Sequence record: MH595538.1
Reading direction: 5' to 3' (one strand)
Length of the DNA: 64,000 bases
Shown here: piece after piece, positions 5,916 to 34,614 of the stretch
Layout: each line of letters begins with the position of its first letter
How positions within the stretch are numbered: the stretch's first letter is position 1
Translations under genes and position numbers: made by a program
The notes under the pieces: generated by a model
What the model saw: the letters and a program-made list of their open reading frames with translations, nothing else
Database searches by the model: none
Told to the model about the DNA's origin: nothing

Positions 5916-7310
5916 GGTGTAAGAAAGGGATCAGCAACTACCTTTTTCCCGATATGGCACATCGAAGCCCGTCAATTAATGGAACTTAAAAACAACCGTG
6001 GTGTTGAAGAAAACCGTGTTCGTACTATGGACTATGGTTTCCAGATTAACCGTTTCTTCTACGAGCGCCTACAGCGTGGTAAGACTATTCGTTTATTCTG
6101 TCCTTCAGAAGTTCCTGGGCTATACGAAGCATTCTTCCAAGATCAAGCTGAGTTTGCAAGACTGTATGAAAAGTATGAAAAGATGCCTCACTTGCGTCAT
6201 CATGATGTTGCCGCTAAAGATCTATTCGGTACATTGATGCAGGAGCGCGCTGGTACAGGCCGTATCTATATACAGCACGTCGACCATACAAACATGTACG
6301 GTAATTTCATTGAAGAAGAAGCGCCAACGTTCATGTCTAACCTGTGTGTAGAAATCACACTGCCTACTAAGCCACTCAAGTTTGATAACGACCCAGAAGG
6401 TGAAATTGCTCTATGTACTTTAGCGGCATTTAACCTTGGCGTGATTACACTCGAAGAGTTCCCTCGTTTGGCTGAACTGGTTGTGCGTTTCCTAGATGCG
6501 CTATTAGACTATCAAGATTATCCTTCTGAAGCAGCACGTAATTCATCGATGAAGCGCCGTACTTTAGGGGTTGGCATCATCAACTATGCATACTGGATCG
6601 CTAAGAATGGATTTAAGTATTCAGACGGCAGTGCAAACAACATGACTCACCTTTGGATTGAGAACATGCAGTACAGCCTAATGAAAGCATCAGTTCAGTT
6701 GGCAAAAGAGAAAGGTGCTTGTCCTGCGTTCAATCAAACTAAGATGGCCAAAGGTATTCTCCCGATTGATAATTACAAGCGTGAAGTCGATGAACTGCAT
6801 ACCCAAGAACTAACTTGCGATTGGGAAGGTCTGCGTGCCGATATCGCTAAGTATGGTATGCGTAACTCTACTATGTCTGCGTTCATGCCTTCTGAAACAT
6901 CATCTCAGATTGCTAATGCAACAAACGGCATTGAGCCACCTAACAAGCTTATGACTCGTAAGGCATCTAAAGACGGTATTCTTTCCCAGGTTGTACCTGA
7001 CGTCGAGAACTTACGTGACTCTTATGAGCTTCGTTGGAACATGCCAGACAACATTGGTTATATTCACCTAGTTGGCATTATGCAGAAGTTCGTATGTCAG
7101 GCAATATCTGCGAATACGAACTACGATCCTGCTAAGTTCCCAGGCGGAAAAGTGCCAATGAACGTTATGCTTAAAGAACTCATGACGTGTTATAAATATG
7201 GTGTTAAAACTCTGTACTATCATAACACGGAAGACGGTAGCAACGACCCAGTAGCTAACGCTATTGAGAAAGAAGACGAAAGCTGCGGCGGTGGTGGCTG
7301 TAAGATTTAA
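5916..7310 (+). CDS. nrdA: Ribonucleotide reductase class Ia alpha subunit, exon 2
   Basis: SNLCVEI (thiyl-radical Cys), LCTL, PSETSSQ, KTLYY, C-terminal CGGGGCKI redox tail. Confidence 0.95.
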   Translation, partial: GVRKGSATTFFPIWHIEARQLMELKNNRGVEENRVRTMDYGFQINRFFYERLQRGKTIRLFCPSEVPGLYEAFFQDQAEFARLYEKYEKMPHLRHHDVAAKDLFGTLMQERAGTGRIYIQHVDHTNMYGNFIEEEAPTFMSNLCVEITLPTKPLKFDNDPEGEIALCTLAAFNLGVITLEEFPRLAELVVRFLDALLDYQDYPSEAARNSSMKRRTLGVGIINYAYWIAKNGFKYSDGSANNMTHLWIENMQYSLMKASVQLAKEKGACPAFNQTKMAKGILPIDNYKREVDELHTQELTCDWEGLRADIAKYGMRNSTMSAFMPSETSSQIANATNGIEPPNKLMTRKASKDGILSQVVPDVENLRDSYELRWNMPDNIGYIHLVGIMQKFVCQAISANTNYDPAKFPGGKVPMNVMLKELMTCYKYGVKTLYYHNTEDGSNDPVANAIEKEDESCGGGGCKI

Positions 7311-7321
7311 TCCGGCACCAT

Positions 7322-7350
7322 AAGGGGAGGTGTGAATACTTCCCCTTTTT
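7322..7350 (+). terminator. Intrinsic terminator after nrdA
   Basis: AAGGGGAG...CTTCCCCTT hairpin plus T run. Confidence 0.7.
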
Positions 7351-7387
7351 TTAACTTATTAAAAATTGAATTTATCAGGAGACTAAA

Positions 7388-8092
7388 GTGTCTAAACAGG
7401 TTATCTTCAAAGCAGGTCCAACAAACTACCTTAATCAACCAATGTTCTTCGGCGACTCTGTATCAACCGCTCGCTATGATCAGCAGACATATCCGTTCTT
7501 TGAAAAGCTTATCGAAAAGCAGCTTTCATTCTTTTGGCGACCTGAAGAAGTAGATGTCTCTGCAGACCGTCGCGATTGGCAAGGACTCTCTAAAGCGGAG
7601 AAACATATCTTTATCTCTAATCTTCAGTATCAGACACTGCTAGATTCTATCCAAGGCCGTAGCCCCAATATCGCATTCTTGCCAATCACCTCAGTACCTG
7701 AAGTAGAGACATGGATTGAAACCTGGTCATTCTCAGAAACGATTCACTCTCGTTCGTACACGCATATTATGCGTAACATCCTCACAGGTGAAGAAATGGA
7801 CGAGGTGTTTAATGGCATTACTACCATTCCTGAAATCATTGCTCGCGCCGAGCGTTTTGGCCGTGCTTACGAAGAACTGATTGAATGCAACAATGCTCTG
7901 CTGCAGTCTAAAGTAGACGTACCTAACCGAGCTGAATTGGAGCGTGAACAAAAACGTAAGTTCCTGCGTGCCCTTGTAACAGTAAACGGTTTAGAAGCTT
8001 TAGCATTCTACGTATCATTTGCATGCTCATGGGCATTTGCCGAACGTTCTATCATGGAAGGTAACGCTAAGATCATTAGACTCATCGCCCGT
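7388..8092 (+). CDS. nrdB: Ribonucleotide reductase class Ia beta subunit, exon 1
   Basis: [45 protein letters not shown]. Confidence 0.95.
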
Positions 8093-9230
8093 TAATATGG
8101 CGGCTTCATGGAGTGATCCATGAATGCACACCTCGTGAAATCAGGGGACTCCGGTAACAGGAAATCCTGAGGTTGCTCTATATCAAATCACCTCCATATA
8201 AAACGTTTTGGTTTTATAGCGAGAGGTTTTATATGAAATGATTTGTTATGGTGAAATATGGATGGATCATAAAGAAAGACCTGATGATTATATTGTCAGT
8301 AATTTTGGCAGGGTCTTTTCCAGAAAAAGTTGTATGATGTTAAAGCAGTCACTAACCAAGGCAGGATATCTAACTTATGGGAGTAGGTTAGGATCGGTCC
8401 ATCGTTTGATTGTGACGCATTATTTAGGACCCATTCCCAAAGGAATGGTAGTTAATCATAAAAATGGAATTAAGACAGATAACTGGATTGATAACCTAGA
8501 GATAACTACTCATTCTGCTAATACCCAACATGCTTACGATACGGGTTTAGCCAAAGGGAAAAAGGGCGCTGCTAACTCACAGGCTAAAGTAACAGAAGAA
8601 ATCATTCTTGATATTTATAAGATGTTCGAAGCTGGCTTTAGTAACCAAGACATTAGTAAAAGATACGGACTGCATGACCGCTACGTATCTCTCATAAGAC
8701 ATGGAAAAAGATGGAAGTATCTGTATGTAAGATACGGTAAGACTTTCCCACGATCGTATGAATTTGTCTTTCGAAAAGAACAGATTCTTATGGCAAGGGA
8801 ACTATTACTCAAGGGCCATAACAATTTAACTATTGCAATGGCAACCGGAATAGAGAAGTCTAACATATCCAGATTCCGACATGGAAAAATGAATGCTTGG
8901 TGTGAGTGGATGGCAATATACGACAGAGCAACCGCAACGACTATCGAAAGCTTAACTTGAGAAGAAATCTCTCGAGGGATGATAAGCTTACCCGCGGGTA
9001 AGTGAAGCGAGTAGAGTACAGCCACAAGCTTATGGTGGTCCTGAAAGGGATAGCGGAGAAATCCGTAATGGAAGCGCGAGGGGTCTCTTATCTGGTAACA
9101 GGGTAAGAGATCATGATATAGTCTGGCCCGGCCTTAACGGCCTATCTGTGAATACACAGGTATCCTAGGTAATGCTAGGAGCAGTATATGAAACTATACG
9201 GGTGTGTTTTGCGAACACACTGAACATACG
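8093..9230 (+). mobile_element. Group I intron (1138 nt) in nrdB carrying a homing endonuclease
   Basis: Removal restores IAR|DETLHL and a 374-aa NrdB; exon ends in U, intron ends in G; P1 CCGU/GCGG; R (CAACGACTA) and S (GATATAGTCT) elements. Confidence 0.93.
8238..8960 (+). CDS. Intron-encoded HNH homing endonuclease (NUMOD4-HNH plus C-terminal HTH-like DNA-binding region)
   Basis: YIVSNFGRV (NUMOD4), VHRLIVTHY, VNHKNGIKTDNWIDNLE (HNH), HSANTQHA. Confidence 0.9.
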   Translation: MICYGEIWMDHKERPDDYIVSNFGRVFSRKSCMMLKQSLTKAGYLTYGSRLGSVHRLIVTHYLGPIPKGMVVNHKNGIKTDNWIDNLEITTHSANTQHAYDTGLAKGKKGAANSQAKVTEEIILDIYKMFEAGFSNQDISKRYGLHDRYVSLIRHGKRWKYLYVRYGKTFPRSYEFVFRKEQILMARELLLKGHNNLTIAMATGIEKSNISRFRHGKMNAWCEWMAIYDRATATTIESLT

Positions 9231-9650
9231 GATGAAACTTTACATTTAGCCGGCACACAGTACATGATCAATGAACTGGCTAAAGGCGCTCAAGGAGCTG
9301 AATGGAAAGAGCTCTTTGAAGAAATGCGTGATGAGCTAGGTGAGATCATGCTAGCTATTGCCATGCAGGAAAAAGAGTGGGGTCGCTACCTGTTTAAAGA
9401 CGGTACGATGATCGGCCTTAACTCAAACATTATAGACCAGCTTATCGAGTACTTCTGTAATATCCGTTGTGCGGCTATTAAACTAGATAAGCCTTTTGCA
9501 GAACAGAAAAAGAATCCAATTGGATGGTTTAACTCTTGGATTCAATCCGCCGGTGTTCAAGTAGCACCGCAAGAAACAGAGCAGTCTTCTTACCTTGTCG
9601 GTCAAGTAGATTCTACTATTGATGAAGACGCTCTAGACATGGATCTTTAA
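9231..9650 (+). CDS. nrdB: Ribonucleotide reductase class Ia beta subunit, exon 2
   Basis: DETLH iron ligands, EKEWGRYLF, VAPQETEQSSYLVGQ with the conserved Tyr. Confidence 0.95.
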   Translation, partial: DETLHLAGTQYMINELAKGAQGAEWKELFEEMRDELGEIMLAIAMQEKEWGRYLFKDGTMIGLNSNIIDQLIEYFCNIRCAAIKLDKPFAEQKKNPIGWFNSWIQSAGVQVAPQETEQSSYLVGQVDSTIDEDALDMDL

Positions 9651-13020: not shown

Positions 13021-13026
13021 TAGTAT

Positions 13027-13148
13027 AGTAGAACGACCACTGCTTATCGTCTACTTGACATAATTGTCAACTCCTGTATTTAGTCATGGAAGACTTAATC
13101 TGCCGCAAGGATGAGTAGGCACCGAAGCGGAGTTTGGATTAAAGCAGT
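13027..13148 (+). ncRNA. Candidate structured non-coding RNA
   Basis: ~150-nt ORF-free gap before its own terminator, with several complementary segments (ACTGCTT/AAGCAGT, TTGACA/TGTCAA, AACTCC/GGAGTT, TTAATC/GATTAA). Confidence 0.35.
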
Positions 13149-13167
13149 AAATGACATTTTTCATTAT

Positions 13168-13199
13168 TTGAGTCCTCCTTCGGGAGGGCTCAATTTTTT
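13168..13199 (+). terminator. Intrinsic terminator
   Basis: TTGAGTCCTCC-TTCG-GGAGGGCTCAA plus T run. Confidence 0.8.
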
Positions 13200-23640: not shown

Positions 23641-25512
23641 TTATCTACGCCAACGAACATTGCCGAATTCGTCTATCTTCATTGTCACAATAGTACGCTT
23701 GCCGTTATTGTAAATAAGCGTATGTGACCAAGACCATGAAGAAGGGCCTTTTGCATAATCAGGGTCTTTCTTACAGGTTATGCCTGATTGATAAACGCCT
23801 GACTTAATACCTGCCTTGTGTGAATGCCCGATACACATTTTGATACCTAGTTTCTTGAATGCAAGCAAGCCACCTCTAGCTCCATCCAATCCGGTATCGC
23901 CATGGTAGCCACATTCAACATCCACAACAGGAAATGACTCATCTTGCTTTAAGAAGATAGAACGAAGCTCTGGTCTGGACAAACGAATGTTCCACTCTAG
24001 AGGATCCACTTCTCTGTTTTCTTCGATGCCTTTATATATCTCTGCTTGCGTCTCTAAGAAGAATCTCGCGTTAATTGGATCACGATGCCAATCTTTGACT
24101 TGTTCAAGCATATAACGCATTGTAGCGCGATCATGATTAGAATTCACAACAACAGGAGTCACAAACTGATGTTGTTCAACGGCATGCAGTAAATTACCTA
24201 CATTATCAATCTCATCCCGTATAGACTCTTCCCCGTGGATAAACTGGCGATAGCGGAAATGAGGGTTATTGATATTGTGATGGTTTCTTGGTTTAAAGTC
24301 ACAGATATCGTGTCCCATTACAAAACAGGGCTTAAGATCTAACATTAAGGATTTAGCTTCAGAAGGACTAAAGCTCATTCGGCCATTGCCTAAATAGGCC
24401 ACATCGATACCTAGTGTTGCTCTTGCGATATCTGGATGGATTTGGTTCGTATGAATATCACCAGGAACCAATCCTGCAATGGTTTGGTTTTCAAATGCAC
24501 CATCAGCGGTATAGTAAGTATCATAATCAAAGAAATTACCGGTATCAGATTCTGCATTGACCTGTCTGACATGCACCATGCCTACTTCGTCAATTTCCAA
24601 TACGAGACCCCCGATGATATGATCGAACTCTGCCTTCTGCCCTGCTTTCTGTTGACGATAGTTAGGTAAACTGATTGTTCCTGTCGTATACATCATGACA
24701 GGCTCTTCGCCTTTAGGCTGTGCAATAGACTGCAGTTCTTGCTTAACATGCCCAAAGATAGCCGAGTGTCCACGACAGAAACCTTCCATGCCAGTAAGGG
24801 GATTAACTGCAGACGGAGAAATATTAAGGTTACCGCGCATGACCATTTCCTTAGAGAAACGAATCACGTCATCATTGATGTACGGCTTTATATCCCTGTC
24901 ATATTGTCCCTGTCCCTTCTGAGAGGGCTGTCCTGCCATTTTGGCATAGGTGAACGTCGTAGTGATAAAGTCGGCGTCATTGCGCTTACAGAACGTTTTA
25001 ATGGCATTTAAGAACCCTTTGTGGATATGGGTATTGTTTTGTGCTGAGGTAATGAATATTGTTCGCTTACCATTCCATGGCACTTCATGATCAGATGGCT
25101 GTCTAGGAGAACCGCCAATAGGATCCTTATCGAACTTTTCCCAAAACTCCTTATGGGTCTTTCTTGCAAATAACGAAATGATCGCAGATTTAGACACACC
25201 CAGTCTGTTTGCAATCTTTTCATGCGATAACTCTTCTACATTACGCAATCGTATTGCTTCACAGAATTGATCCCAGTCAATCTTTCGCCCGTTAACGGAT
25301 TCTTTAGTCACTAAAGTACCGTTTGCTTTCTTGTAATAGCCAACTATCTTCTCAATACAGTTCATAACCGTTACACGAGAAACGCCTAGTTCTTTACTGG
25401 CCTTTGTCGCGTTCTGACCATGACTGATGTATGCCTTAAGGACAACCCTTTGTCTTTCGGTTCGACATACGGAGAGATACTCAGGTCTACTTACATCGAT
25501 ATCCTTAATCAT
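23641..25512 (-). CDS. Calcineurin-like metallophosphoesterase/nuclease with two N-terminal HTH motifs (T5 A1-like)
   Basis: GDIH, GHDICD, NSNHD, YHGD, IGHSH metal-binding motifs; HTH motifs ASKELGVSRVTV and IANRLGVSKSAI; FITSAQNNT. Confidence 0.72.
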   Translation of the reverse strand: MIKDIDVSRPEYLSVCRTERQRVVLKAYISHGQNATKASKELGVSRVTVMNCIEKIVGYYKKANGTLVTKESVNGRKIDWDQFCEAIRLRNVEELSHEKIANRLGVSKSAIISLFARKTHKEFWEKFDKDPIGGSPRQPSDHEVPWNGKRTIFITSAQNNTHIHKGFLNAIKTFCKRNDADFITTTFTYAKMAGQPSQKGQGQYDRDIKPYINDDVIRFSKEMVMRGNLNISPSAVNPLTGMEGFCRGHSAIFGHVKQELQSIAQPKGEEPVMMYTTGTISLPNYRQQKAGQKAEFDHIIGGLVLEIDEVGMVHVRQVNAESDTGNFFDYDTYYTADGAFENQTIAGLVPGDIHTNQIHPDIARATLGIDVAYLGNGRMSFSPSEAKSLMLDLKPCFVMGHDICDFKPRNHHNINNPHFRYRQFIHGEESIRDEIDNVGNLLHAVEQHQFVTPVVVNSNHDRATMRYMLEQVKDWHRDPINARFFLETQAEIYKGIEENREVDPLEWNIRLSRPELRSIFLKQDESFPVVDVECGYHGDTGLDGARGGLLAFKKLGIKMCIGHSHKAGIKSGVYQSGITCKKDPDYAKGPSSWSWSHTLIYNNGKRTIVTMKIDEFGNVRWRR

Positions 25513-25516
25513 GTTA

Positions 25517-25960
25517 CTATCCTTGTTTTAAGGGATGGCCATCCGGTAGCCACACCTGGAGAACATCTATATCCAAACTACGCACATGCTCACATACTCG
25601 AGGATCATCATCGACCCATAACTGAATGTCTTCCTTGTTTTCAGCTATCCATTGTTTCTTGTATGCACTAGGACTTAGATCACAATCTAGAGGACGCTCA
25701 TAGATTGCATCAGGCTCCGGTATTCCGTTAATCTCTAACCACTTAGCCGTACCCATTGAAGAACTGGTTAAGATAATAACTCTTTGTCCAGAATTCAAAA
25801 GGGCTTTATAGATAGTGATCATTCTAGGAATAGCAGGTGAGCGTTCGGAAACGTACTTGGTCCACGGTATCCAATTTTCAGCGCGCGTCATGTCCTCTGG
25901 AACCATATGGCCAGAATCCGTATTGTCACGCAAGGTTTGGTCTAGATCAAACACATACAT
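25517..25960 (-). CDS. HAD-family phosphatase (PseT/Pnkp 3'-phosphatase-like)
   Basis: VFDLDQTL (DxDxT), ILTS, K, WVDDDP. Confidence 0.85.
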   Translation of the reverse strand: MYVFDLDQTLRDNTDSGHMVPEDMTRAENWIPWTKYVSERSPAIPRMITIYKALLNSGQRVIILTSSSMGTAKWLEINGIPEPDAIYERPLDCDLSPSAYKKQWIAENKEDIQLWVDDDPRVCEHVRSLDIDVLQVWLPDGHPLKQG

Positions 25961-26057
25961 TTTAAGACTCCCTATTATGTCTTTAATAAAAATGCTTCCA
26001 GCCTATTAATCCTGAGTATGTTCACTCTAATTCATGGCTTTCAAATTATCTATAGAT

Positions 26058-26075
26058 CTATATCACCATAATGAA
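26058..26075 (+). promoter_or_regulatory. Putative early-type promoter motif
   Basis: CTATATCACCATAATGAA upstream of the AAA+ genes. Confidence 0.5.
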
Positions 26076-26119
26076 TTCGTGCCTTTAAGGCAAACATTGA
26101 ACATAAAGGAAACATTAAT

Positions 26120-27625
26120 ATGAAAGACAGTAATGCAATTGATCGCTATAACCACAGCCTAGATATGCAATCACTTTTGCCAGATTCGCCACAGACAAAG
26201 ATATCGCTGATGAAATGGGCAGGTCCATCTGACTTTAGCTATGATTTAGGGTTCGCCTTTGCCTGCAAAAACCCTGACGTCAATGCGGTTACTGATAAGT
26301 TTCTTCAGAAACTATGTGCAATCTATGGCGAAGATAATGTACAGGTATGTGATCGCCGAGATACCGTGGTAGAAAAACACCCTAATCCTGAGTATAAGGA
26401 TCATGAAATGAAAATGATGTGGACATATGTGAAAACACCAAATGCTGTTTTTCGCTTCTCTGCTGAAAATCTAAGGGATGTAAGTCAAGAGCTCCATACC
26501 GCAGTTACGTGCGGTGCTGGCGGATGCAACATGCATGGCCGCGAACATATCTCCATGATCTGCGATGAGATGAATGAACATATCCAGGGCACGCAAATGA
26601 TGGACAATGAAGATAAGCCTATGCAGACGGTTAACTTTGTTACATTGACAATGGGCAATGACGGCAATATTCTTCCGATTACCGAGGTTATTAATAGCAA
26701 TGAGTTGATAGATTCTAAATCATACATGTATCCGTTTATCGACACCGAAATGATGTATGACTTATATCACGAAGGCACAGAAAATGTTCTTGTGTTATCT
26801 GGTAAATCCGGAACCGGGAAAACATCATTGGCAAGAAGAATCATTCTGGAGCTAGCGCGACGTGAGTCAAAGGGTATTGTTACGGACATGATGCATAACC
26901 AACCCTATCGTCCGGTAAGGAACGTAGTCTATATCAAGGACGAAAGTATCTTAAAGCTAGACGCTGTTTATGCACAGCTTCAGCAGCTCAAGCCTTTGGC
27001 TATCTTGCTTGACGACATGGATCAGGGACTGCAGCCCCGCTTCCTTGATGATATGTCTGAGGAGGTGAGAGAACTTGTCCTCAACGGTGCAAACAACGGA
27101 GTCAATAATTTTCAGGCAAACCATAATGAAACCATGAATAAGTTACTTTCTTATTCTGATGGCGCATTAAAGCATAAAACGCGCATTATCATTACAACGA
27201 ACCGAGGAGTAAAGAAAGGTAACATCGAACCAGCTTTAGTTCGTACTGGTCGTTGTTTTGAAGTACTGGATATTCCAGAGCTTACTTACGACGAGGCATT
27301 AGAGGTATGGACAGTACATCTCCAGAAGCCAACAGAAGGGTTTGTTGCTTTGTTTGGTGATGCTGAACAATCACCTACTATCTGCCAAGCTGAACTTAAG
27401 CGCGAGAGTGACTTATGGACCAAGGTCGGTAAGCGCGGGTTCCTGAAACGCAATGACATCTCTATTCGCAGCCACATCGGCGGCGATGCTGTTCGTCGCG
27501 CGCGACGTGATGAATACAACGAGGCGGTTGTCTTTGAAGATAAAAGCCAGGGCATGTCAAGACCAGGAGAACGACTTCCAATTGGCGGCGGATGGAACGC
27601 TATGAACGCCAAGCCTACTCACTAA
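26120..27625 (+). CDS. AAA+ ATPase (classical clade with SRH), paralog 1
   Basis: Walker A GKSGTGKT, Walker B ILLDD, sensor IIITTN, SRH ALVRTGRCF. Confidence 0.9.
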   Translation: MKDSNAIDRYNHSLDMQSLLPDSPQTKISLMKWAGPSDFSYDLGFAFACKNPDVNAVTDKFLQKLCAIYGEDNVQVCDRRDTVVEKHPNPEYKDHEMKMMWTYVKTPNAVFRFSAENLRDVSQELHTAVTCGAGGCNMHGREHISMICDEMNEHIQGTQMMDNEDKPMQTVNFVTLTMGNDGNILPITEVINSNELIDSKSYMYPFIDTEMMYDLYHEGTENVLVLSGKSGTGKTSLARRIILELARRESKGIVTDMMHNQPYRPVRNVVYIKDESILKLDAVYAQLQQLKPLAILLDDMDQGLQPRFLDDMSEEVRELVLNGANNGVNNFQANHNETMNKLLSYSDGALKHKTRIIITTNRGVKKGNIEPALVRTGRCFEVLDIPELTYDEALEVWTVHLQKPTEGFVALFGDAEQSPTICQAELKRESDLWTKVGKRGFLKRNDISIRSHIGGDAVRRARRDEYNEAVVFEDKSQGMSRPGERLPIGGGWNAMNAKPTH

Positions 27626-27632
27626 TTAAACC

Positions 27633-27654
27633 TACTGCCCCTGCAGGGGCAGTA
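27633..27654 (+). terminator. Hairpin between the AAA+ paralogs
   Basis: TACTGCCCCT-GC-AGGGGCAGTA. Confidence 0.6.
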
Positions 27655-27687
27655 ACTATTTATATTTAACCAAAAGAGAACATTAAT

Positions 27688-29001
27688 ATGTATATTAACG
27701 CAACACGCATTGAAGAAGTGATTGAAAAGCACAACAATCCCGAATCTTTAGAAATGATGAAAGAGATCATCTCTAACCCAGGCGATCTTCCTATGTTTCC
27801 TGTTTACTCGATGTTGGCGAGAAAGGCCTTGCCTGGAATGACATCACTCCCATTGCCGGATGTTACTATTAAAGGAACCCTAGGGGAAGTCCAGGAAAAG
27901 ATCGCGCGATACCTGGATATCGAGGACATGCCGGGTGCAGTAAATATAACGCCTGAATCAAGCAAGATGGGTGATTATAATGCCTATGGCTTTATCGACC
28001 ATCCATGGGGTACCGTGAGGCTAGAATGGGAAAACCATATAGTGGAAGGCATTCCATGCATCAAACTAGATATTAGCGCTGCTATTGGCTTTATTGAGTT
28101 CTCGGATCTTATGGTCGGAATGCTCAGAGATCTGCAGATGAAGCCAGCTAAAGCTAAGGAAGAAGTTGACCGTGACGGCGAAAAGAACTACAGGGTCGAT
28201 GTTATCTCTTTGAGTTATGAAAATAATGAACTAGGTGCAGAGCAATCTAAGCACATGACTGATGAGTTTAAAGACATTCGTTATGAGCTATATCCTCGTA
28301 TTAACGTTCCGTTAATGATGGATCAATATACGCATCCGGATTCAGCTAACGTACTGATTCTTGTCGGTCCCCCAGGTACAGGTAAGACATCACTGCTCCG
28401 ACGTGCTATCGCAGATGTTGCTGTTCGACGTGAACATGACATCACCGCGGTCTATATTAAGAACCCAGATATCCTTGTTAATGATGCCGTACTTAATAAG
28501 ATCGGTAAAGTTAACCCTGATTTCTTGATTCTAGATGACATGGATGAAGGCCTTAAATGCCGTGAAGTTCATGGCGAGAATCCTCTCATGAATAAACTGC
28601 TGTCATTCTCCAACGGTGCGATCAAAAACAATATCAAAATTATCATCACTACTAACCGCAGTATTGATAATAAAGGCGATATTGACGGTGCGCTGGTAAG
28701 ACGCGGTCGTTGTTTTAATGTGCTTAAACTACCTCGCTTAACTTATGGCGAAGCAATGAGTGCTTGGATTGACGCATTCAATCGTCCTGTCGAAGGCTTT
28801 CGTGAATTGTTCCGTGATGAAACGATAGAGATCGATCAAGCTACTTTGGCGGCTGAAGCTCTCCTCTACGGAGAATTCGGAGGATCAGATTACCTGCTGG
28901 ACCCTACTATTTCAGTACGTGAACAACTTGCCCCTGACACAGTTAATGTGGAGAAGGCGGCTCCTGCTATGATGGGAAAGCACCAGGCGACCCTGAACTA
29001 G
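27688..29001 (+). CDS. AAA+ ATPase, paralog 2 (0-frame product 437 aa)
   Basis: GPPGTGKT, LILDD, IIITTN, ALVRRGRCF. Confidence 0.9.
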   Translation: MYINATRIEEVIEKHNNPESLEMMKEIISNPGDLPMFPVYSMLARKALPGMTSLPLPDVTIKGTLGEVQEKIARYLDIEDMPGAVNITPESSKMGDYNAYGFIDHPWGTVRLEWENHIVEGIPCIKLDISAAIGFIEFSDLMVGMLRDLQMKPAKAKEEVDRDGEKNYRVDVISLSYENNELGAEQSKHMTDEFKDIRYELYPRINVPLMMDQYTHPDSANVLILVGPPGTGKTSLLRRAIADVAVRREHDITAVYIKNPDILVNDAVLNKIGKVNPDFLILDDMDEGLKCREVHGENPLMNKLLSFSNGAIKNNIKIIITTNRSIDNKGDIDGALVRRGRCFNVLKLPRLTYGEAMSAWIDAFNRPVEGFRELFRDETIEIDQATLAAEALLYGEFGGSDYLLDPTISVREQLAPDTVNVEKAAPAMMGKHQATLN

Positions 29002-29186
29002 AGGAGGACTCAGTAGACGGTATTGTAGCGGCGTTGAAGGAATCACTTCCCCAATATTTACTGAGTACTCCCACTGGGCCTGGACGTGGACTAAAAACAC
29101 GTATAATTCATGCCGAAGATGATCCCAGGCCATTAACGCCAGTAATAGCTGCTCATGTTCTCCATCGGTCTAAAAAGAAACACTAA
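28974..29186 (+). CDS. -1 frame extension of AAA+ paralog 2 via putative programmed frameshift
   Basis: G GGA AAG heptamer in phase at 28974-28980; the -1 frame stays open 70 codons to TAA at 29184, just before the terminator; no own start codon. Confidence 0.55.
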   Translation, partial: GKAPGDPELEEDSVDGIVAALKESLPQYLLSTPTGPGRGLKTRIIHAEDDPRPLTPVIAAHVLHRSKKKH

Positions 29187-29190
29187 CCAC

Positions 29191-29210
29191 ATGGCCTCTT
29201 CGGAGGCCAT
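29191..29210 (+). terminator. Intrinsic terminator
   Basis: ATGGCCTC-TTCG-GAGGCCAT plus T-rich tail. Confidence 0.8.
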
Positions 29211-29244
29211 TATCTTTTAATTTTATTTTTTAATTGGAGGTTAC

Positions 29245-29631
29245 ATGCCTGGCGCATATGAAGTATTTACTTGGCTATTAAGGGCACTAGTTTGCTTTGG
29301 CGCATTAACATGCTGGGGCCATATCGCAAGATCGGTCAACTATAGCTATATCGTATATTGCACGCCGAGCAATGTCAATTCACAAACCTTTTATGGCAAG
29401 GTATTGCTTAATCTGGGCGGCTATGGGGTTGCGCTATCGATGATATTAAGCACTCCGATGACAATGACATTGGAAATAATCATCGCCTTTCTAGTGCTCA
29501 TTCCTGTATGGAAGCCTAAACACAGGATACCTAAAAAGAAATGGATGGCTGCATATAACTCGACGGTTTTAATATTGTCAGTAATGCTTGCTTATAAAAC
29601 CTATATTGTAATTTCTTACTTATCGATCTGA
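29245..29631 (+). CDS. Multi-pass membrane protein
   Basis: GGAGG RBS; about four hydrophobic segments. Confidence 0.75.
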   Translation: MPGAYEVFTWLLRALVCFGALTCWGHIARSVNYSYIVYCTPSNVNSQTFYGKVLLNLGGYGVALSMILSTPMTMTLEIIIAFLVLIPVWKPKHRIPKKKWMAAYNSTVLILSVMLAYKTYIVISYLSI

Positions 29632-29664
29632 ATCTTATGACGATCCCTCTATAAGGAAAACTAC

Positions 29665-30660
29665 ATGGATGAAAATACTCCTGGCGTACACAAAGTAACC
29701 AAGGTTGATTTACTGAAAGAAGATTTACCTAGGGTAGATATACGAACGTTGTTTGGTCCTGATGACTATAACCTCAAGTGCATTGATGAATATCTCGGTA
29801 CCAGTTCGCACTATATTGACGGCACCGTTGTGTTCCAAGGTCCAACTAAGGAAGCAGCTAAACACGCTAAGAAAGCATTTTACGATATCTTGTTTCATTT
29901 GAAAGATCACAAGGATATCGATCAAGATACTTTAAAAGCGCTTGTATCCGCTTCTAAGAACAAGGAACATAAATTTGGTGCAACTACTCAAGTGCAGATA
30001 CTTGAAGGCACTCTGAAGCTTGTCAACAGCGAACAGCAGGCATTATGGGATGCGTTCCATAACAATGATATTATTATCGTCAATGGACCTGCTGGCACAG
30101 GCAAAACATTATTGTCAATCGGTTATGCGATAATGGGCCTTACTGAAGAAAGATTTAAGAAGATTATCTTTAGTAGACCAGCTGTTGAAACCAGTGAATC
30201 GATAGGTGCATTGCCAGGAGATGAATCTCAAAAGATCGCACCTTTCCTAAGACCAATTTATGACAACCTCAGTTTCTATGTCAGCGATCCTAAATGGGCA
30301 GTGCAGAATATCGACGACGGTAATCTGGAAACAAACCATGTCGGATATATGCGAGGACGTAGTCTGCGTGATACATTCATGTTCTTTGATGAAGTACAGA
30401 ATATGACCGTGTCCGAAGCGAAAATGGCGGTTACTCGCATCGCTAATGGGTCTAAGGTTGTTCTAGCAGGAGATCGAGCCCAATGTGACTTAGGGCGCAA
30501 CTACCGAGATCCCGAATCTGGATATACCAATGGCCTGGATTATCTTTATGATAAGCTGGTTAATGAACAATCCAAGATCAAAGGGGTTGCTGTCATAGAG
30601 CTTACTGAAAGCTCTGTCATGCGCCATCCTACAGTTAAAAACTTACTTCCTTATATTTAA
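29665..30660 (+). CDS. phoH: PhoH-family ATPase
   Basis: GPAGTGKT, SRPAVE, GALPGD, YMRGRSL, DEVQN, TRI..GSK.V..GD..QCD. Confidence 0.95.
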   Translation: MDENTPGVHKVTKVDLLKEDLPRVDIRTLFGPDDYNLKCIDEYLGTSSHYIDGTVVFQGPTKEAAKHAKKAFYDILFHLKDHKDIDQDTLKALVSASKNKEHKFGATTQVQILEGTLKLVNSEQQALWDAFHNNDIIIVNGPAGTGKTLLSIGYAIMGLTEERFKKIIFSRPAVETSESIGALPGDESQKIAPFLRPIYDNLSFYVSDPKWAVQNIDDGNLETNHVGYMRGRSLRDTFMFFDEVQNMTVSEAKMAVTRIANGSKVVLAGDRAQCDLGRNYRDPESGYTNGLDYLYDKLVNEQSKIKGVAVIELTESSVMRHPTVKNLLPYI

Positions 30661-30664
30661 AACA

Positions 30665-30697
30665 GTTATTCCCATGGCGTCTGCCATGGGAAATAAC
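30665..30697 (+). terminator. Intrinsic terminator
   Basis: TTCCCATGGC-GTCT-GCCATGGGAA. Confidence 0.7.
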
Positions 30698-30699
30698 AT

Positions 30700-30716
30700 C
30701 TATATCATATTGGTTA
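30700..30716 (+). promoter_or_regulatory. Putative early-type promoter motif
   Basis: CTATATCATATTGGTTA immediately after a terminator. Confidence 0.4.
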
Positions 30717-30729
30717 GCGGAGGCATGCT

Positions 30730-31089
30730 ATGAACCCAGTAATCAATCGAATCATCAAAAGAGGTCTAGATGACAAGTATCCGGAATTCGGAGATATTCT
30801 AGATCTATATAACTTGTATGGTACAAGGCTTACTGCCAACCATTATCTTATTGCTGCACTAGGACGTGGATCCAATGATCTTTATGGTGACGTATCCAAT
30901 ATTGAATACGGACTTCATAACTATACTAACAACCAATTGTTAGTGGTGAGCATCGGCTTAGGTTCTGAAGAGACCGTAAAGGACGTTAGTCATTTGAGTC
31001 CGCATACTAATTGCATTAACAATTTCCGTTCTGATGCTAATTTCAACAGCATCCCATTCCCAATGATACATGAATACATTAAGGATTAA
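30730..31089 (+). CDS. Hypothetical protein
   Basis: GGAGG RBS, 119 aa. Confidence 0.75.
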   Translation: MNPVINRIIKRGLDDKYPEFGDILDLYNLYGTRLTANHYLIAALGRGSNDLYGDVSNIEYGLHNYTNNQLLVVSIGLGSEETVKDVSHLSPHTNCINNFRSDANFNSIPFPMIHEYIKD

Positions 31090-31091
31090 CA

Positions 31092-32294
31092 ATGAGTGAT
31101 TTACACGATCGTTTAAACGCCCTTATCGCCCACGGTAAAGAATTTCAACTTGTTCTAGGTGATCTGCCTGTCGGCATTGCTAAGAAAGTATGTCGCGGTA
31201 ACTACGAAGGAGAATATGTCGTTGAAGTAGAGTCCAAAGAATTCTCACGCCCAATTGATGTTCGCATGAACCAATTCACAATGGCTTTGTTCGGTGCGAC
31301 TGAAGCTGAAATTGAACTAGTGGCTCCTAATGACTTCTTTGGTGATGAATTCCAAGAAGAAGCAGAGAATGCTAAAGGAATTCGCAACCAACATCTAGGC
31401 ATTATTGTGAAGGATGAAATGGGAGTTCATGTATCTTCAGACATGGATCTTATCCGAGCAGCTAATTTTGACGACTATGTTCTTTATGACATCAGCGGCG
31501 CTATCTGGCTTCACCATAAAGTAATGGATCTAGAATACATCGATCCTAACGTTAACACTATTGAGAAAATGGAAGAAGCGGATTCTGGCTGGAAGCTATT
31601 AGGCGCAGAGAACATCATTCGCTGGGATCATCCTACTGTCGATCCAGACAGTTATGCTGTACTGATTCCTAAAACAATGGTCCAAATGCCATGGGAGTAT
31701 ATTGATACAGAAGGCAATACACTTACTCATGACACCAAGGTATTCCAGTCTGAAGGCGGATTCTTTAAGATTGTTCTTTCGAAGCAAGTGCGTGAAAGCT
31801 TAGATGAGCAAACTGCGGCAATGGCAGAACAAAGCCTGGTACCTCACAGCATTCTACTGGGCAAAAAGGCTACCGGTCCAACCATGGATCAGTATACGGA
31901 TTTCCTTAAGCGTGTTGTTGAGTTTACATTCACTCCAGAAACCCTGAGTTCTATCCTAGGCGATAGTTTAAAAGAAGGCATTGATACTAATCAAGCTATT
32001 TCTGCGGTAAAGACCTGGGCAGTAACGCATCTGTCTCGAATCCATGCAGACTTCAAATACTCCGATAATGCAGAGTTTGAAGGATGGCTAAACGACTATA
32101 TCGACGATGCCATAAGTCCAGAAACTGACGTTCAGATTGCAGTTAATGAAAATGGTGGTGCTCGAGAAGACGAAGACCAATGGGATGCATACAAGCGAAT
32201 TCTTAAAGAAAAGATCTTCGAGTATCGTGAAAGCGACAATCCTCAAATCATGGTCTATCGCGCATCATCGATCGACCCAATCAAACCTGAATAA
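31092..32294 (+). CDS. Hypothetical acidic protein (400 aa)
   Basis: Long ORF, AAGGA RBS. Confidence 0.8.
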   Translation: MSDLHDRLNALIAHGKEFQLVLGDLPVGIAKKVCRGNYEGEYVVEVESKEFSRPIDVRMNQFTMALFGATEAEIELVAPNDFFGDEFQEEAENAKGIRNQHLGIIVKDEMGVHVSSDMDLIRAANFDDYVLYDISGAIWLHHKVMDLEYIDPNVNTIEKMEEADSGWKLLGAENIIRWDHPTVDPDSYAVLIPKTMVQMPWEYIDTEGNTLTHDTKVFQSEGGFFKIVLSKQVRESLDEQTAAMAEQSLVPHSILLGKKATGPTMDQYTDFLKRVVEFTFTPETLSSILGDSLKEGIDTNQAISAVKTWAVTHLSRIHADFKYSDNAEFEGWLNDYIDDAISPETDVQIAVNENGGAREDEDQWDAYKRILKEKIFEYRESDNPQIMVYRASSIDPIKPE

Positions 32295-32314
32295 ATTCAC
32301 AAAGAGATAATATT

Positions 32315-32740
32315 ATGTCAATAATTGTAAAGCAACAAAACGATAACGCTCTAGTATTAGATAAAGCAAAGTTCTTACTTACCATGGGTCCTGCCTTTTT
32401 ATCGATTGACTTTCCATTTGAAGTCGATTTAAAGGCGGATTCACGGTTCTTCACGGCAACGTTTGAAATTGGAATTGTTCCAGAAGCGACCACTCTGATT
32501 CCTGAAAATCATCCAATGGCCAGAAAGTTTGGCTTAAATGAAGATCAGTTACGAGCACTAGCAGTCGATGTTGTCGTCACTGGTACAAAGATCGACGAAG
32601 ACGATGCATGGGTATGTTCTGTTGCTGACTATTTGTTTACTTGCAGTGATCGTGAAATTGCGAATAAGTTCTCGCAAGAGCGTGGTGCACTTATTCAAAA
32701 TATCCTGAGTAATAACATCAAATTTACCTTAATGGACTAG
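32315..32740 (+). CDS. Hypothetical protein
   Basis: AGAG RBS, 141 aa. Confidence 0.75.
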   Translation: MSIIVKQQNDNALVLDKAKFLLTMGPAFLSIDFPFEVDLKADSRFFTATFEIGIVPEATTLIPENHPMARKFGLNEDQLRALAVDVVVTGTKIDEDDAWVCSVADYLFTCSDREIANKFSQERGALIQNILSNNIKFTLMD

Positions 32741-32889
32741 CAGTTTAATAAATCTGTTAGTTGGTAGATTTAAAAGCATTATGACCTAGGACCGTTAGCC
32801 GTTATGGCATTCTAGGAGAGGGGACTGGCCGAACCCTCGTCGCACTCGCTACCGCGACCATAGGCCAAATTTCTTATCAGGAGATAACA

Positions 32890-33303
32890 ATGGCACAATC
32901 TAAGATTTTTAGCGTGGAGACCAAAAAGTACGTCGGTCTGGGAATTGATTTCGATGAAGAATGGGATGCCTGGAAAGAGTATCGCGATAAACTGACAACA
33001 ACAGGAGCCAGCGTCGATGTTTATGAAGCAGATGGTACTCCAGTTACGGTTACGTTTACTTCTATAGCTCTCGTCCACAGTACGGCAGGTAAACATGTGT
33101 TACTAGAAGTCGCACCGGGCAGTGTCGCTGATGCTGACACCTACAGTGCTCAAATAGCGTCGATTACTCCCGTGATACATCAGACTGCCCAGAATACTTA
33201 TGATACGTTCCTATATACACGGAACGCAGAGTCACTAAGTAAAGATGGAAATGCGCCTATTAATCATATCTATCGTGCACTACAGCACTTGAACAAAATT
33301 TAA
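32890..33303 (+). CDS. Hypothetical protein
   Basis: AGGAG RBS; terminator at 33310-33329. Confidence 0.75.
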   Translation: MAQSKIFSVETKKYVGLGIDFDEEWDAWKEYRDKLTTTGASVDVYEADGTPVTVTFTSIALVHSTAGKHVLLEVAPGSVADADTYSAQIASITPVIHQTAQNTYDTFLYTRNAESLSKDGNAPINHIYRALQHLNKI

Positions 33304-33359
33304 TATCTAGTCTCTCCTTCGGGAGAGACCTTACTTTTTTATTTATTTGGAGAACTATT

Positions 33360-33629
33360 ATGTGGTTAACATACAGTGAACTCATGCGATGGCAACGTGC
33401 ATGGAACAAAACCTTTCCAGAGCAAAATATCTATATTTCCTCCAATAGAGATAAAAGCACTATTGTTGCAGCTAAATATGACGTCCATCATTACATCGGC
33501 GAGGACCTTGATAACACCCTTGCCTTTACAGGAAAGATCAGTTGCTGCATTTCTTATATGAAGGGCATGTTAGCACAAAAGACACCGGAACAACGCACTT
33601 GCTTCTATCTGGTTAAAACGGAACAGTAG
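33360..33629 (+). CDS. Hypothetical protein
   Basis: GGAG RBS, 89 aa. Confidence 0.65.
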   Translation: MWLTYSELMRWQRAWNKTFPEQNIYISSNRDKSTIVAAKYDVHHYIGEDLDNTLAFTGKISCCISYMKGMLAQKTPEQRTCFYLVKTEQ

Positions 33630-33639
33630 GAACTAAACT

Positions 33640-34614
33640 ATGTTTAAGTGGATAAAGAAATACATTTCTTTCAGCGGATGGAAGAATGATGGCGCGATCG
33701 TAGGCATGGTCCATCTTAGAGAATCCAGCAATCTATCGGCAAGACTAGGTCAATATAGCACAGACAGCATTGATCCATGGCGGTCAGTAGGTCTACTTTG
33801 GGACGTTAATCATGACGATGTAGGGCATCGACTTGAAATCAGCCTCTGGAAATTCTTCCTAGAAATAGAAATCAATGTACGATGGATCAATGCACTGACG
33901 TATAAGCTTACTCGAAGCAGCAGACGCCTAGGTTTAGAGATTTCCAAATCTCGCTTTGAATTGTCTCTGTTTAACATCGACAATGATTATGCGGATGAAT
34001 ACAGCTGGCTAAAACGAAAAGGGATGAATACCGACAATAGGGGTAAATGGTGGTTTAAGTTATTTTGGCGAGTGCGTCGCGGATATAACTATAGCTTCTG
34101 GTGGGATAGATTACAAGGAGATACGGTATATCAGCCCAAGAAGATAGTCGGTCATGAAATTGAAGCCTGTTATGAATTAGAACATGCCGGAAAGACCCAT
34201 AGTTATCGTCTGCCATTTACAGTAGATTTAGAAATAGGTCAATATACTCGAACCAGTATCTTTGGTTTTGTTAAAGAAGACAAGCAATGCCACAAGATGA
34301 GCATTCAGATAAATAGGAATGAACTGGACAGTCGACGGTTCTTCCATATCCCAACTCGCTACGGTAAAGGAGAGAACTCATGGGACTGTGATGACTGTCC
34401 GATTCTCTATGCTGGAACCGGATTGCTATTTGGGGATTTGCCCAAGCCTTTAACTAGACATGGAACACTGGCGAAATGCGATCTCGTTAAAGAGACTCCA
34501 GAGTTCAGACAGGCTGTTCGTTACATGGTTGAGCAATACGCTGAACATGTCTTGCATGAATGGAAAAAGTATGGTCGTGCCAACGATACTGATTCCAGTA
34601 AAATGAACTTTTAA
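33640..34614 (+). CDS. Hypothetical Trp/Tyr-rich protein (324 aa)
   Basis: AGGA RBS; terminator at 34624-34648. Confidence 0.8.
   Translation: MFKWIKKYISFSGWKNDGAIVGMVHLRESSNLSARLGQYSTDSIDPWRSVGLLWDVNHDDVGHRLEISLWKFFLEIEINVRWINALTYKLTRSSRRLGLEISKSRFELSLFNIDNDYADEYSWLKRKGMNTDNRGKWWFKLFWRVRRGYNYSFWWDRLQGDTVYQPKKIVGHEIEACYELEHAGKTHSYRLPFTVDLEIGQYTRTSIFGFVKEDKQCHKMSIQINRNELDSRRFFHIPTRYGKGENSWDCDDCPILYAGTGLLFGDLPKPLTRHGTLAKCDLVKETPEFRQAVRYMVEQYAEHVLHEWKKYGRANDTDSSKMNF

What the first reader, a model, noticed from the sequence alone, without database searches (positions are those of the whole stretch)
28950..29210. Lambda-type -1 programmed frameshift giving AAA+ ATPase 2 a hidden 68-aa C-terminal extension
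Seen: seven codons before its stop, the AAA+ gene reads atG GGA AAG (28974-28980). This is an X XXY YYZ heptamer in the correct phase and is identical to the lambda G-T slippery site. The -1 frame has no start codon but stays open 70 codons (GKAPGDPELEEDSVDGIVAALKESLPQYLLSTPTGPGRGLKTRIIHAEDDPRPLTPVIAAHVLHRSKKKH). It ends at TAA 29184, four bases before the terminator, and so fills the apparent intergenic gap. A purine-rich SD-like tract (GGAGAAGG, 28950-57) lies upstream. Inference: two isoforms (437 and 499 aa; paralog 1 is 501 aa) would form hexamers with a fixed fraction of tailed subunits, for example for docking to a partner protease. Frameshifting in phages is mostly known for tail chaperones and capsid genes.
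Basis: partly seen in the sequence, partly recalled or inferred. Interest (0 to 1): 0.8.

Follow-up and report, generated by a model that had tools for sequence, protein, structure and literature searches.

The report
Probable -1 frameshift in phage ATPase gene
A jumbo Vibrio phage AAA+ ATPase gene probably uses ribosomal slippage near its end to make a minority of longer subunits; its one close relative has the same layout, but the added tail does not look like ordinary coding sequence and no protein data exist.

Summary
The window is the last 64 kb of Vibrio phage BONAISHI. The gene is ORF259 (27688-29001), a classical-clade AAA+ ATPase annotated as a hypothetical protein.

- An in-phase X_XXY_YYZ heptamer lies at 28974-28980.
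- The -1 frame stays open for 68 codons, to 29184-29186.
- That stop is 4 nt before the terminator at 29191-29210.

Support for frameshifting:
- Of 29 in-phase heptamers in 64 annotated genes, only this one is followed by a long -1 frame.
- The one close relative (metagenomic contig L003, 48% identity) has a different in-phase heptamer of the same high-efficiency class, two codons before its stop.
- L003 also has a 54-codon -1 frame that ends 13 nt before a terminator, an SD-like hexamer 8 nt upstream and a hairpin 6 nt downstream, as described for dnaX.

Evidence against:
- The extension has no homologue anywhere, and the two extensions are unrelated.
- Its coding statistics resemble open non-coding DNA.
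- More distant relatives lack the feature.
- BONAISHI is a PacBio-only assembly.

Verdict: -1 programmed frameshifting is the best explanation (confidence about 0.6). It would be a new member of a known kind. The protease-docking idea is unsupported.

The parts
27688..29001 (+). ORF259 (AXH71000.1), 0-frame product of 437 aa. Classical-clade AAA+ ATPase: poorly modelled N-terminal region 1-158, AAA core and lid about 159-395, predicted disordered tail 396-437.
   Evidence: PF00004 E=1.6e-12. Nearest solved structures are VCP-like/Cdc48/p97. AlphaFold2 model confident only for 159-395.
28950..28957 (+). Purine-rich SD-like tract that ends 16 nt upstream of the heptamer. A weak candidate stimulator at best.
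   Evidence: Read directly. The spacing is longer than the 10 nt described for dnaX (PMC11162774).
28974..28980 (+). In-phase X_XXY_YYZ slippery heptamer of the G_GG.A_AA.G class, at codons 429(3rd base)-431 of ORF259. It is the proposed -1 slip site.
   Evidence: This class is one of the three most efficient -1 motifs in E. coli (PMC4066793; PMC6924986).
28947..29186 (+). Open stretch of the -1 frame. It overlaps the 0 frame for 52 nt, has 68 sense codons after the heptamer (28980-29183), and stops at 29184-29186.
   Evidence: Open in 3% of dinucleotide shuffles. Single-sequence AlphaFold2 gives one helix at extension residues 12-28 and the rest without predicted secondary structure at low confidence. 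Coding statistics are weak.
28983..29083 (+). Predicted long irregular RNA hairpin that starts 2 nt after the heptamer. Its inner, most regular stem spans 28998-29077. It is a candidate downstream stimulator.
   Evidence: -31.4 kcal/mol for 28981-29080, z=-1.93, reached by 7 of 200 shuffles; among the most stable 0.8% of 100-nt windows in 24000-34000.
29191..29210 (+). Intrinsic terminator of the ORF259 transcription unit. It lies 4 nt after the -1 stop and 189 nt after the 0-frame stop.
   Evidence: In 11 of 14 comparable + strand cases in the window, the terminator starts 4-21 nt after the stop.
27633..27654 (+). Terminator after paralog ORF258. It marks the upstream boundary of the ORF259 unit.
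26120..27625 (+). ORF258, the tandem AAA+ paralog (501 aa). It has no heptamer near its end and no extension. Given for context only.
   Evidence: (39% identity over the AAA core).

Best explanation
ORF259 of Vibrio phage BONAISHI is expressed as two proteins from one mRNA by -1 programmed ribosomal frameshifting. Most ribosomes read through the heptamer at 28974-28980 and stop six codons later, giving the 437-aa AAA+ ATPase. A fraction slip back one base on the Gly-Lys codons. The Gly and Lys tRNAs can both re-pair in the -1 frame. Those ribosomes then translate 68 more codons to 29184-29186, just before the terminator, giving a 499-aa isoform. The added tail is predicted to be mostly disordered, with one short helix and a basic end. 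The heptamer, its phase, the open -1 frame and the terminator position are shown. The same architecture in the only close relative, with different letters, is also shown. The slippage itself, its efficiency and any role of the tail are inferred. With no strong, canonically spaced stimulator in the window, I would guess a low efficiency of a few percent there. Efficiency may be higher in the relative L003, which has dnaX-like signals. The most likely role is to give AAA+ rings a set minority of tailed subunits that carry a short partner-binding or localisation peptide. That last step is speculation.
For: (1): the heptamer is in phase. It is the only one of 29 in-phase heptamers in 64 genes with a long -1 frame after it (68 codons against at most 19). 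(2): the closest homologue anywhere is P0002 on L003 (48% identity, E=2e-86). It has an in-phase A_AA.A_AA.G heptamer at L003 1350-1356, two codons before its stop, and a -1 frame open for 54 codons to 1520. The letters differ but the class and position are the same. My chance estimate for L003 alone is at most about 3e-4: roughly 7 positions times 1-5e-4 per codon, times 0.08 for the open frame. (3): L003 has GAGGAG 8 nt upstream of the heptamer. It also has a hairpin whose main stem starts 6 nt downstream (-18.9 kcal/mol, z=-3.45). These are close to the dnaX spacings of 10 and 6 nt (PMC11162774). (4): in both loci the RNA just 3' of the heptamer is among the most stable local structures, top 0.8% in the window and top 3.3% in L003. 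(5): the -1 stops lie 4 and 13 nt before the terminators, the usual distance in this genome, whereas the 0-frame stops lie 189 and 171 nt before them. (6) PMC4066793 and PMC6924986: both heptamers are among the three most efficient -1 motifs in E. coli. The host is also a gammaproteobacterium. (7): the slip site lies in a predicted disordered tail after the folded AAA+ module, so either ending is structurally tolerable.
Against: (1) The extension is an orphan. It has no Pfam or PHROG family and no tblastn match in 50,697 phage records. Against 1.84 billion protein representatives it gives only repeat-protein artefacts. (2) The extensions of the window and L003 show no similarity. Their genuine 0-frame tails are just as dissimilar, however. 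(3) Coding statistics are poor. The periodic Markov score is 0.006 per nt, against a mean of 0.09 for genes. That is lower than 99.4% of in-frame gene windows and lower than the last 60 codons of all 47 genes tested, and it falls within the range of open intergenic windows (the codon-usage version is). (4) Support rests on two lineages only. Relatives at 40% identity or less, the paralog ORF258 and the phiKZ-type homologue all lack the heptamer and the extension. (5) In the window the SD-like tract is too far upstream, and the downstream structure starts 2 nt after the heptamer, an atypical spacing. (6) BONAISHI was assembled from PacBio RS II reads only (PMC6207643). (7) There are no expression or proteomic data.
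Confidence: 0.6

Rival explanations
1. A one-base indel. The real or ancestral gene is a single continuous reading frame of about 499 codons. The deposited sequence carries one frameshift in its 3' end. This would be either a residual homopolymer error of the PacBio-only assembly or a genuine recent mutation that truncates a dispensable tail. Short base runs are hot spots for indels, so a slippery-looking run at the break would not be surprising.
For: BONAISHI was assembled from PacBio RS II reads alone with HGAP (PMC6207643). The frame change falls in a 52-nt overlap that contains short G and A runs. In L003 the site is a six-A run, a typical indel hot spot.
Against: It needs two independent events, in two assemblies made from different data, at the same end of the same gene. 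It does not predict the SD-like hexamer and the hairpin at dnaX-like spacing in L003, nor the unusually stable RNA 3' of both sites. If the tail had recently been ordinary in-frame coding sequence it should score like one, but it scores below all 47 gene tails tested. Coverage was 1,720x.
Confidence: 0.13
2. Coincidence with no programmed function. The 3' UTR happens to be open in the -1 frame and a slippery heptamer happens to lie near the stop. Ribosomes slip only at background level, and the extended product, if any, is noise.
For: The extension looks like open non-coding DNA by codon and periodic Markov scores. It has no homologue and no similarity to the L003 extension. Another long untranslated stretch before a terminator exists in this genome at 13021-13167. 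About 0.2 such coincidences are expected per 300-gene genome (my estimate). Without stimulators these heptamers shift at only about 0.3% (PMC4066793).
Against: The same coincidence would have to recur in the single close homologue, which I estimate at 3e-4 or less. There it comes with an SD-like element and a hairpin at the right distances. Both -1 frames end 4-13 nt before the terminator. Both sites are followed by top-percentile RNA structure.
Confidence: 0.2
3. A separate small gene lies in the gap. It would be translated either from its own start in the -1 frame (TTG at 29034 in the window, GTG at 1356 in L003) or from the antisense ORFs (window 28912-29133, L003 1322-1498).
For: ORFs with start codons exist in both places. 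In L003 the GTG lies 14 nt after GAGGAG.
Against: In the window no ATG or GTG exists in the frame, and the only strong SD-like run (29001-29008) is 25 nt from the TTG. Start positions are not comparable between the loci. The antisense ORFs share no similarity, score near zero for coding, lie in different frame relations to the sense frame and overlap the AAA+ gene end. The gene caller behind the Logan record called none of them.
Confidence: 0.04
4. The frame change happens at the RNA level. The RNA polymerase slips on the base run and adds a base to part of the transcripts, rather than the ribosome slipping.
For: L003 has a run of six A. PMC4066793 notes transcriptional slippage on long A or U runs.
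Against: The window has only three A and three G in a row, too short for known slippage-prone runs. The flanking SD-like element and hairpin in L003 are ribosomal-frameshift signals.
Confidence: 0.03

Closest known systems
E. coli dnaX tau/gamma -1 programmed frameshift
   Same: The gene encodes an AAA+ ATPase. The heptamer is of the V_VV.A_AA.G class, and in L003 it is the identical class A_AA.A_AA.G. L003 also has an upstream SD-like hexamer and a downstream hairpin at nearly the dnaX spacings: 8 and 6 nt here against 10 and 6 nt (PMC5389563; PMC11162774). Two products in a set ratio come from one mRNA.
   Different: In dnaX the shifted ribosome stops almost at once, so the frameshift product is the shorter protein. 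Here it is the longer one. ORF259 is a classical-clade AAA protein nearest VCP/Cdc48, not a clamp-loader subunit. No Rfam frameshift element matches either locus. The window itself lacks a well-spaced SD.
Phage lambda tail assembly chaperone pair G / G-T
   Same: The heptamer class is the same as in the window. PMC6924986 cites the lambda tail assembly paper for it. The slip site lies a few codons before the 0-frame stop. The frameshift product is a minor, C-terminally extended isoform, and no strong flanking stimulator is evident.
   Different: The gene is not a tail chaperone and does not sit between tail tube and tape measure genes. It is an AAA+ ATPase in a block of early or metabolic genes. 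The lambda-type arrangement is conserved across very many phages, whereas this one is seen in two lineages only.
IS3/IS911 transposase orfA-orfB -1 frameshift
   Same: These use the same high-efficiency heptamer classes with a downstream structure (PMC4066793). The frameshift fuses a downstream frame that has no efficient start of its own.
   Different: There the downstream frame is a long, conserved catalytic domain. Here it is a short orphan tail with weak coding statistics.

Membership tests
-1 programmed ribosomal frameshift cassette (bacterial X_XXY_YYZ type) | A heptamer in X_XXY_YYZ phase that lets both P- and A-site tRNAs re-pair in the -1 frame | tested here: met
   28974-28980 is in phase. 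The class is among the three best in E. coli (PMC4066793).
-1 programmed ribosomal frameshift cassette (bacterial X_XXY_YYZ type) | A -1 frame open past the site that gives a distinct product and lacks its own efficient start | tested here: met
   68 codons run to 29184-29186. There is only an internal TTG without an SD.
-1 programmed ribosomal frameshift cassette (bacterial X_XXY_YYZ type) | Heptamer and open -1 frame conserved in homologues | tested here: inconclusive
   Present in the only close relative, L003. Absent from the nine more distant homologues examined. No further relatives turned up in six searches of collections.
-1 programmed ribosomal frameshift cassette (bacterial X_XXY_YYZ type) | Stimulatory elements at functional spacing: an upstream SD-like sequence about 10 nt away and a downstream structure about 5-9 nt away | tested here: inconclusive
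   Met in L003. In the window the SD-like tract ends 16 nt upstream. The structure starts 2 nt downstream, or 17 nt for its inner stem, although it is in the top 0.8% for stability.
-1 programmed ribosomal frameshift cassette (bacterial X_XXY_YYZ type) | The trans-frame protein is actually made | not testable with these tools
   No proteomic or ribosome-profiling data are available. The BONAISHI paper reports none for ORF259.
-1 programmed ribosomal frameshift cassette (bacterial X_XXY_YYZ type) | The extension shows signs of being coding (composition or homology) | tested here: not met
   The periodic Markov score of 0.006 per nt is below all 47 gene tails. There is no homologue.
Curated RNA frameshift elements (Rfam) | Match to a covariance model of a described frameshift element | tested here: not met
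   No Rfam match at E<=1 in window 28800-29400 or in L003, and none at gathering score in the whole window.
Classical AAA ATPase (Pfam PF00004) | Match above the curated cut-off that covers the Walker A/B and second-region-of-homology part | tested here: met
   PF00004 scores 48.4 bits against a cut-off of 21.2, over residues 223-349. The best solved relatives are VCP-like ATPase, Cdc48 and p97.
Phage tail assembly chaperone G/G-T type | A tail chaperone protein family, in a gene located between tail tube and tape measure genes | tested here: not met
   The Pfam and PHROG hits are AAA ATPases. The neighbours are a paralogous ATPase, a small membrane protein and PhoH.
Proteasome-type AAA ATPase with C-terminal docking tail (hydrophobic-Tyr-X ending; established knowledge) | Penultimate tyrosine preceded by a hydrophobic residue at the very C-terminus | tested here: not met
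   Neither the 0-frame end nor the -1 frame end has a penultimate Tyr. The -1 end is a Lys/His cluster.

The most novel reading that the evidence does not exclude
The frameshift is an evolved device that gives a jumbo-phage AAA+ unfoldase-like ring a fixed minority of subunits with a fast-evolving, disordered, basic-ended tail recruited from former 3' UTR. BONAISHI is phiKZ-related. In such a phage the tail could direct a subpopulation of the enzyme to a different compartment or partner. That would make recoding a way of splitting one ATPase between two cellular locations.
Probability: 0.1. Interest if true: 0.75.

Novelty: new member of a known kind. Interest (0 to 1): 0.5.

Why it matters
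If real, this adds a non-structural gene, an AAA+ ATPase of a phiKZ-related jumbo phage, to the short list of phage genes expressed by -1 frameshifting. That list is dominated by tail chaperones and capsid proteins. It would also correct the annotation of BONAISHI ORF259 and explain a 243-nt "intergenic" gap. The pair of loci would then be a natural example of the same recoding architecture kept with different heptamers and unrelated tails. That bears on how C-terminal extensions arise from untranslated sequence. The prediction can be tested directly with existing descriptive methods, namely read pile-ups and proteomics or ribosome profiling of infected cells.

Tried and rejected
- **Close relatives in public phage genomes, IMG/VR and JGI metagenomes:** megablast, tblastn and pattern scans found only BONAISHI itself and relatives at 40% identity or less.
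- **Protein database searches:** three searches gave only P0002-P0005.
- **Homologues of the extension alone:** Pfam, PHROGs, tblastn and phmmer against 1.84 billion representatives were tried. The two phmmer hits are repeat proteins whose many weak matches add up, so they are not relatives. The L003 extension also gave nothing.
- **Similarity between the extension and other tails:** I compared it with the paralog's tail, the 107-aa in-frame tail of P0003 and the L003 extension. A short helix-like resemblance to the P0003 C-terminus caught my eye but is not significant (Smith-Waterman P=0.375 against shuffles).
- **Coding-potential tests as positive evidence:** they came out weak or negative.
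- **Antisense ORFs and internal starts as the real genes:** rejected.
- **Known RNA families:** none matched.
- **Stop-to-terminator distance as a decisive argument:** it is only supportive, because 13021-13167 is a genuine 147-nt untranslated stretch.
- **Synteny between L003 or L004 and the window:** none beyond the ATPase gene.
- **Joined trans-frame product:** it was not built, searched or folded. The pieces were handled apart.
Full report
**Identity of the region.** The window matches Vibrio phage BONAISHI (MH595538.1) at 100% identity and corresponds to record positions 224968-288967. BONAISHI is a phiKZ-related jumbo myovirus of Vibrio coralliilyticus. It was sequenced on PacBio RS II only and assembled with HGAP at 1,720x coverage (PMC6207643). 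The gene in question is ORF259 (27688-29001, AXH71000.1, "hypothetical protein"). Its tandem paralog is ORF258 (26120-27625).

**What the protein is.**
- ORF259 is a classical-clade AAA ATPase. PF00004 scores 48.4 bits against a cut-off of 21.2.
- Its best solved relatives are VCP-like ATPase, Cdc48 and p97.
- PHROG families 14322 and 11907 match.
- An AlphaFold2 model from a six-sequence alignment is confident only for residues 159-395. Residues 396-437 fall below pLDDT 50.
- The paralogs share 39% identity over the AAA core, and that alignment ends at ORF259 residue 419.

**Check of the observation.**
- The heptamer at 28974-28980 begins on a third codon position, so it is in X_XXY_YYZ phase. 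Six sense codons and a stop follow it.
- The -1 frame is open from 28947 to the stop at 29184-29186, with 68 codons after the heptamer.
- The terminator at 29191-29210 starts 4 nt after that stop.
- The purine-rich tract at 28950-28957 exists.
- The only correction concerns the claim of no start codon. The -1 frame has an internal TTG at 29034, but no ATG or GTG and no SD at initiation distance.

**Is it more than chance within the window?**
- The 64 annotated genes of window 1-50000 (15,210 codons) hold 29 in-phase XXXYYYZ heptamers. For 28 of them the -1 frame closes within 19 codons. Only this one runs on (68 codons) and passes the 0-frame stop.
- The -1 frame of 29001-29186 stays open in 3.0% of dinucleotide-preserving shuffles.
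- Given the heptamer frequency and the 52-nt overlap, I estimate about 6e-4 per gene. That is about 0.2 expected in a 300-gene genome. The window alone would therefore not convince.

**The relative.**
- Searches of phage genomes, IMG/VR, JGI metagenomes and a 5.8-billion-protein collection found only one homologue above 40% identity. It is P0002, on a 2.8-kb Logan contig from SRR29340339, held here as L003. Identity is 48% over 282 residues, E=2e-86.
- The L003 gene (127-1362) ends with an in-phase A_AA.A_AA.G heptamer at 1350-1356, two codons before the stop.
- The -1 frame then runs 54 codons to 1520. A terminator follows at 1534-1555.
- The hexamer GAGGAG at 1336-1341 lies 8 nt upstream of the heptamer.
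- A hairpin spans 1358-1410. Its main stem starts at 1363, 6 nt downstream of the heptamer. It folds at -18.9 kcal/mol, z=-3.45, reached by 1 of 200 shuffles.
- The literature describes dnaX as a slippery heptamer with an SD-like sequence 10 nt upstream and a hairpin 6 nt downstream (PMC11162774; PMC5389563).
- C_CC.A_AA.G, G_GG.A_AA.G and A_AA.A_AA.G are the three most efficient motifs in E. coli (PMC4066793). The window's heptamer shifts in vivo almost as well as the dnaX one, with the lambda tail assembly paper cited for it (PMC6924986).
- So the two homologues carry different heptamers of the same top class, at the same place in the gene. Each is followed by a -1 frame that ends just before the terminator.
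- For L003 taken as an independent test I estimate a chance probability of about 3e-4 or less, before counting the flanking signals.

**Further support.**
- Sliding-window folding gives a genomic control. The 100 nt after the window's heptamer are among the most stable 0.8% of 100-nt windows in 24000-34000. The 60 nt after the L003 heptamer are among the most stable 3.3% of that contig.
- In the window the structure is a long irregular hairpin at 28983-29083, with an inner stem at 28998-29077. It scores z=-1.9 against shuffles.
- For 14 intergenic + strand terminators with at least 7 stem pairs, the stop-to-stem distances are 4, 4, 6, 6, 7, 8, 9, 11, 11, 12, 21, 51, 147 and 189 nt. The 189 is the ORF259 0-frame stop. 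Measured from the -1 stop the distance is 4 nt. In L003 the figures are 171 and 13 nt.

**Evidence against.**
- The extension has no detectable relative. The two phmmer hits are repeat proteins with many weak matches.
- The window and L003 extensions are unrelated. The bona fide 0-frame tails of the two proteins are equally unrelated, and tails vary in length and sequence across the family. Lack of similarity is therefore weak evidence.
- Composition is more serious. A three-periodic second-order Markov model trained on the window's genes gives the extension 0.006 per nt, and -0.02 for the part beyond the 0-frame stop. Leave-one-out in-frame gene windows average 0.09. Only 0.6% of those windows score as low.
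- None of 47 genes has a last-60-codon segment that low (minimum 0.031). Genuine tails score higher: ORF258 0.157, P0003 0.062, the L003 0-frame tail 0.085. Open intergenic windows score about the same as the extension.
- Codon-usage ratios tell the same story.
- The L003 extension also scores near zero. This is less informative, because L003's own neighbouring genes also score low (one near zero) under the BONAISHI-trained model.
- More distant homologues end shortly after the conserved I-S-[IV]-R motif, without heptamer or extension. These are the Zobellviridae phages, Vibrio phage D69, PA7, P0003-P0005 and ORF258.
- The window's SD-like tract ends 16 nt upstream of the heptamer.

**Weighing the explanations.**
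- Coincidence is disfavoured by the repeat in L003 with its flanking signals.
- A one-base indel, whether assembly error or mutation, would need two independent events in two assemblies. It does not predict the flanking signals. It predicts a tail that until recently was normal coding sequence, which the composition contradicts even more strongly than it contradicts frameshifting.
- A separate gene in the gap, sense or antisense, lacks comparable starts and similarity.
- Transcriptional slippage is implausible for the three-base runs of the window.
- I therefore put -1 programmed ribosomal frameshifting at about 0.6, coincidence or non-functional slippage at 0.2, an indel at 0.13, and the rest on the minor rivals.
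- The weak composition fits a young, fast-evolving, mostly disordered tail recruited from 3' UTR and translated by a minority of ribosomes. Single-sequence AlphaFold2 predicts one helix at extension residues 12-28 (block pLDDT 71-82) and the rest at low confidence with no predicted secondary structure. That reading is an inference, not a finding.

**Function.** Nothing here supports docking to a protease. Neither C-terminus has a hydrophobic-Tyr-X ending. The extension matches no family, and the paralog's tail is unrelated. What can be said is limited: the slip site lies after the folded AAA+ module, so the two isoforms would differ only in a flexible C-terminal appendage.

**Comparison and novelty.** In mechanism this is the known bacterial X_XXY_YYZ -1 frameshift. 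L003 resembles dnaX in its signals. The window resembles the lambda G/G-T case in heptamer class and in giving a longer minor product. It belongs to neither gene family and matches no Rfam element. A full-text search found no paper that links programmed frameshifting to jumbo phage genes of this kind. I rate it a new member of a known kind, of moderate interest.

Noticed in passing
window 33360-33629 (+): An unannotated ATG-initiated ORF of 89 aa fills most of the 336-nt gap between ORF265 and ORF266, just after the terminator at 33310-33329. It is probably a missed small gene.
   Followed up: partly
window 4568-9650: The ribonucleotide reductase genes are annotated in pieces. Alpha is 4568-5479 plus 5877-7310, with a 397-nt gap. 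Beta is 7388-8095 plus 9264-9650, with an HNH endonuclease gene at 8238-8960 in between. This suggests intervening mobile elements. No Rfam intron family reached its gathering score.
   Followed up: partly
window 29001-29008: A strong SD-like purine run overlaps the 0-frame stop codon of ORF259. It forms the 5' arm of the long hairpin at 28998-29077. No start codon follows at initiation distance, so its role, if any, is structural or related to ribosome pausing.
   Followed up: partly
window 13021-13193: A 147-nt stretch with no plausible ORF lies between the stop of ORF240 and a strong terminator at 13168-13193. It shows that long untranslated 3' regions do occur in this genome.
   Followed up: yes
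L008 1117-3690, L009 633-3206, L011 1081-3654: In Zobellviridae Vibrio phages the homologous 370-aa AAA ATPase gene sits directly upstream of the primase/helicase gene, separated by 150-290 nt. This hints at a replication-linked role for the family.
   Followed up: no
L003 72-94 and 1534-1555; window 27633-27654 and 29191-29210: In both phages the ATPase gene is bracketed by intrinsic terminators, so it looks like a single-gene transcription unit. In both it is followed by a small hydrophobic protein gene that starts Met-Pro, but the two small proteins show no significant similarity.
   Followed up: partly
outside the window (BONAISHI AXH70828.1, from a table in PMC7765460): A table in the pir03 paper lists an ORF with ClpP-type annotation (IPR001907; top HHpred hit an E. 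coli structure) whose best BLASTP hit is BONAISHI AXH70828.1. This is a possible lead for anyone pursuing a protease partner. ORF259 is not of the ClpX/ClpA clade.
   Followed up: no
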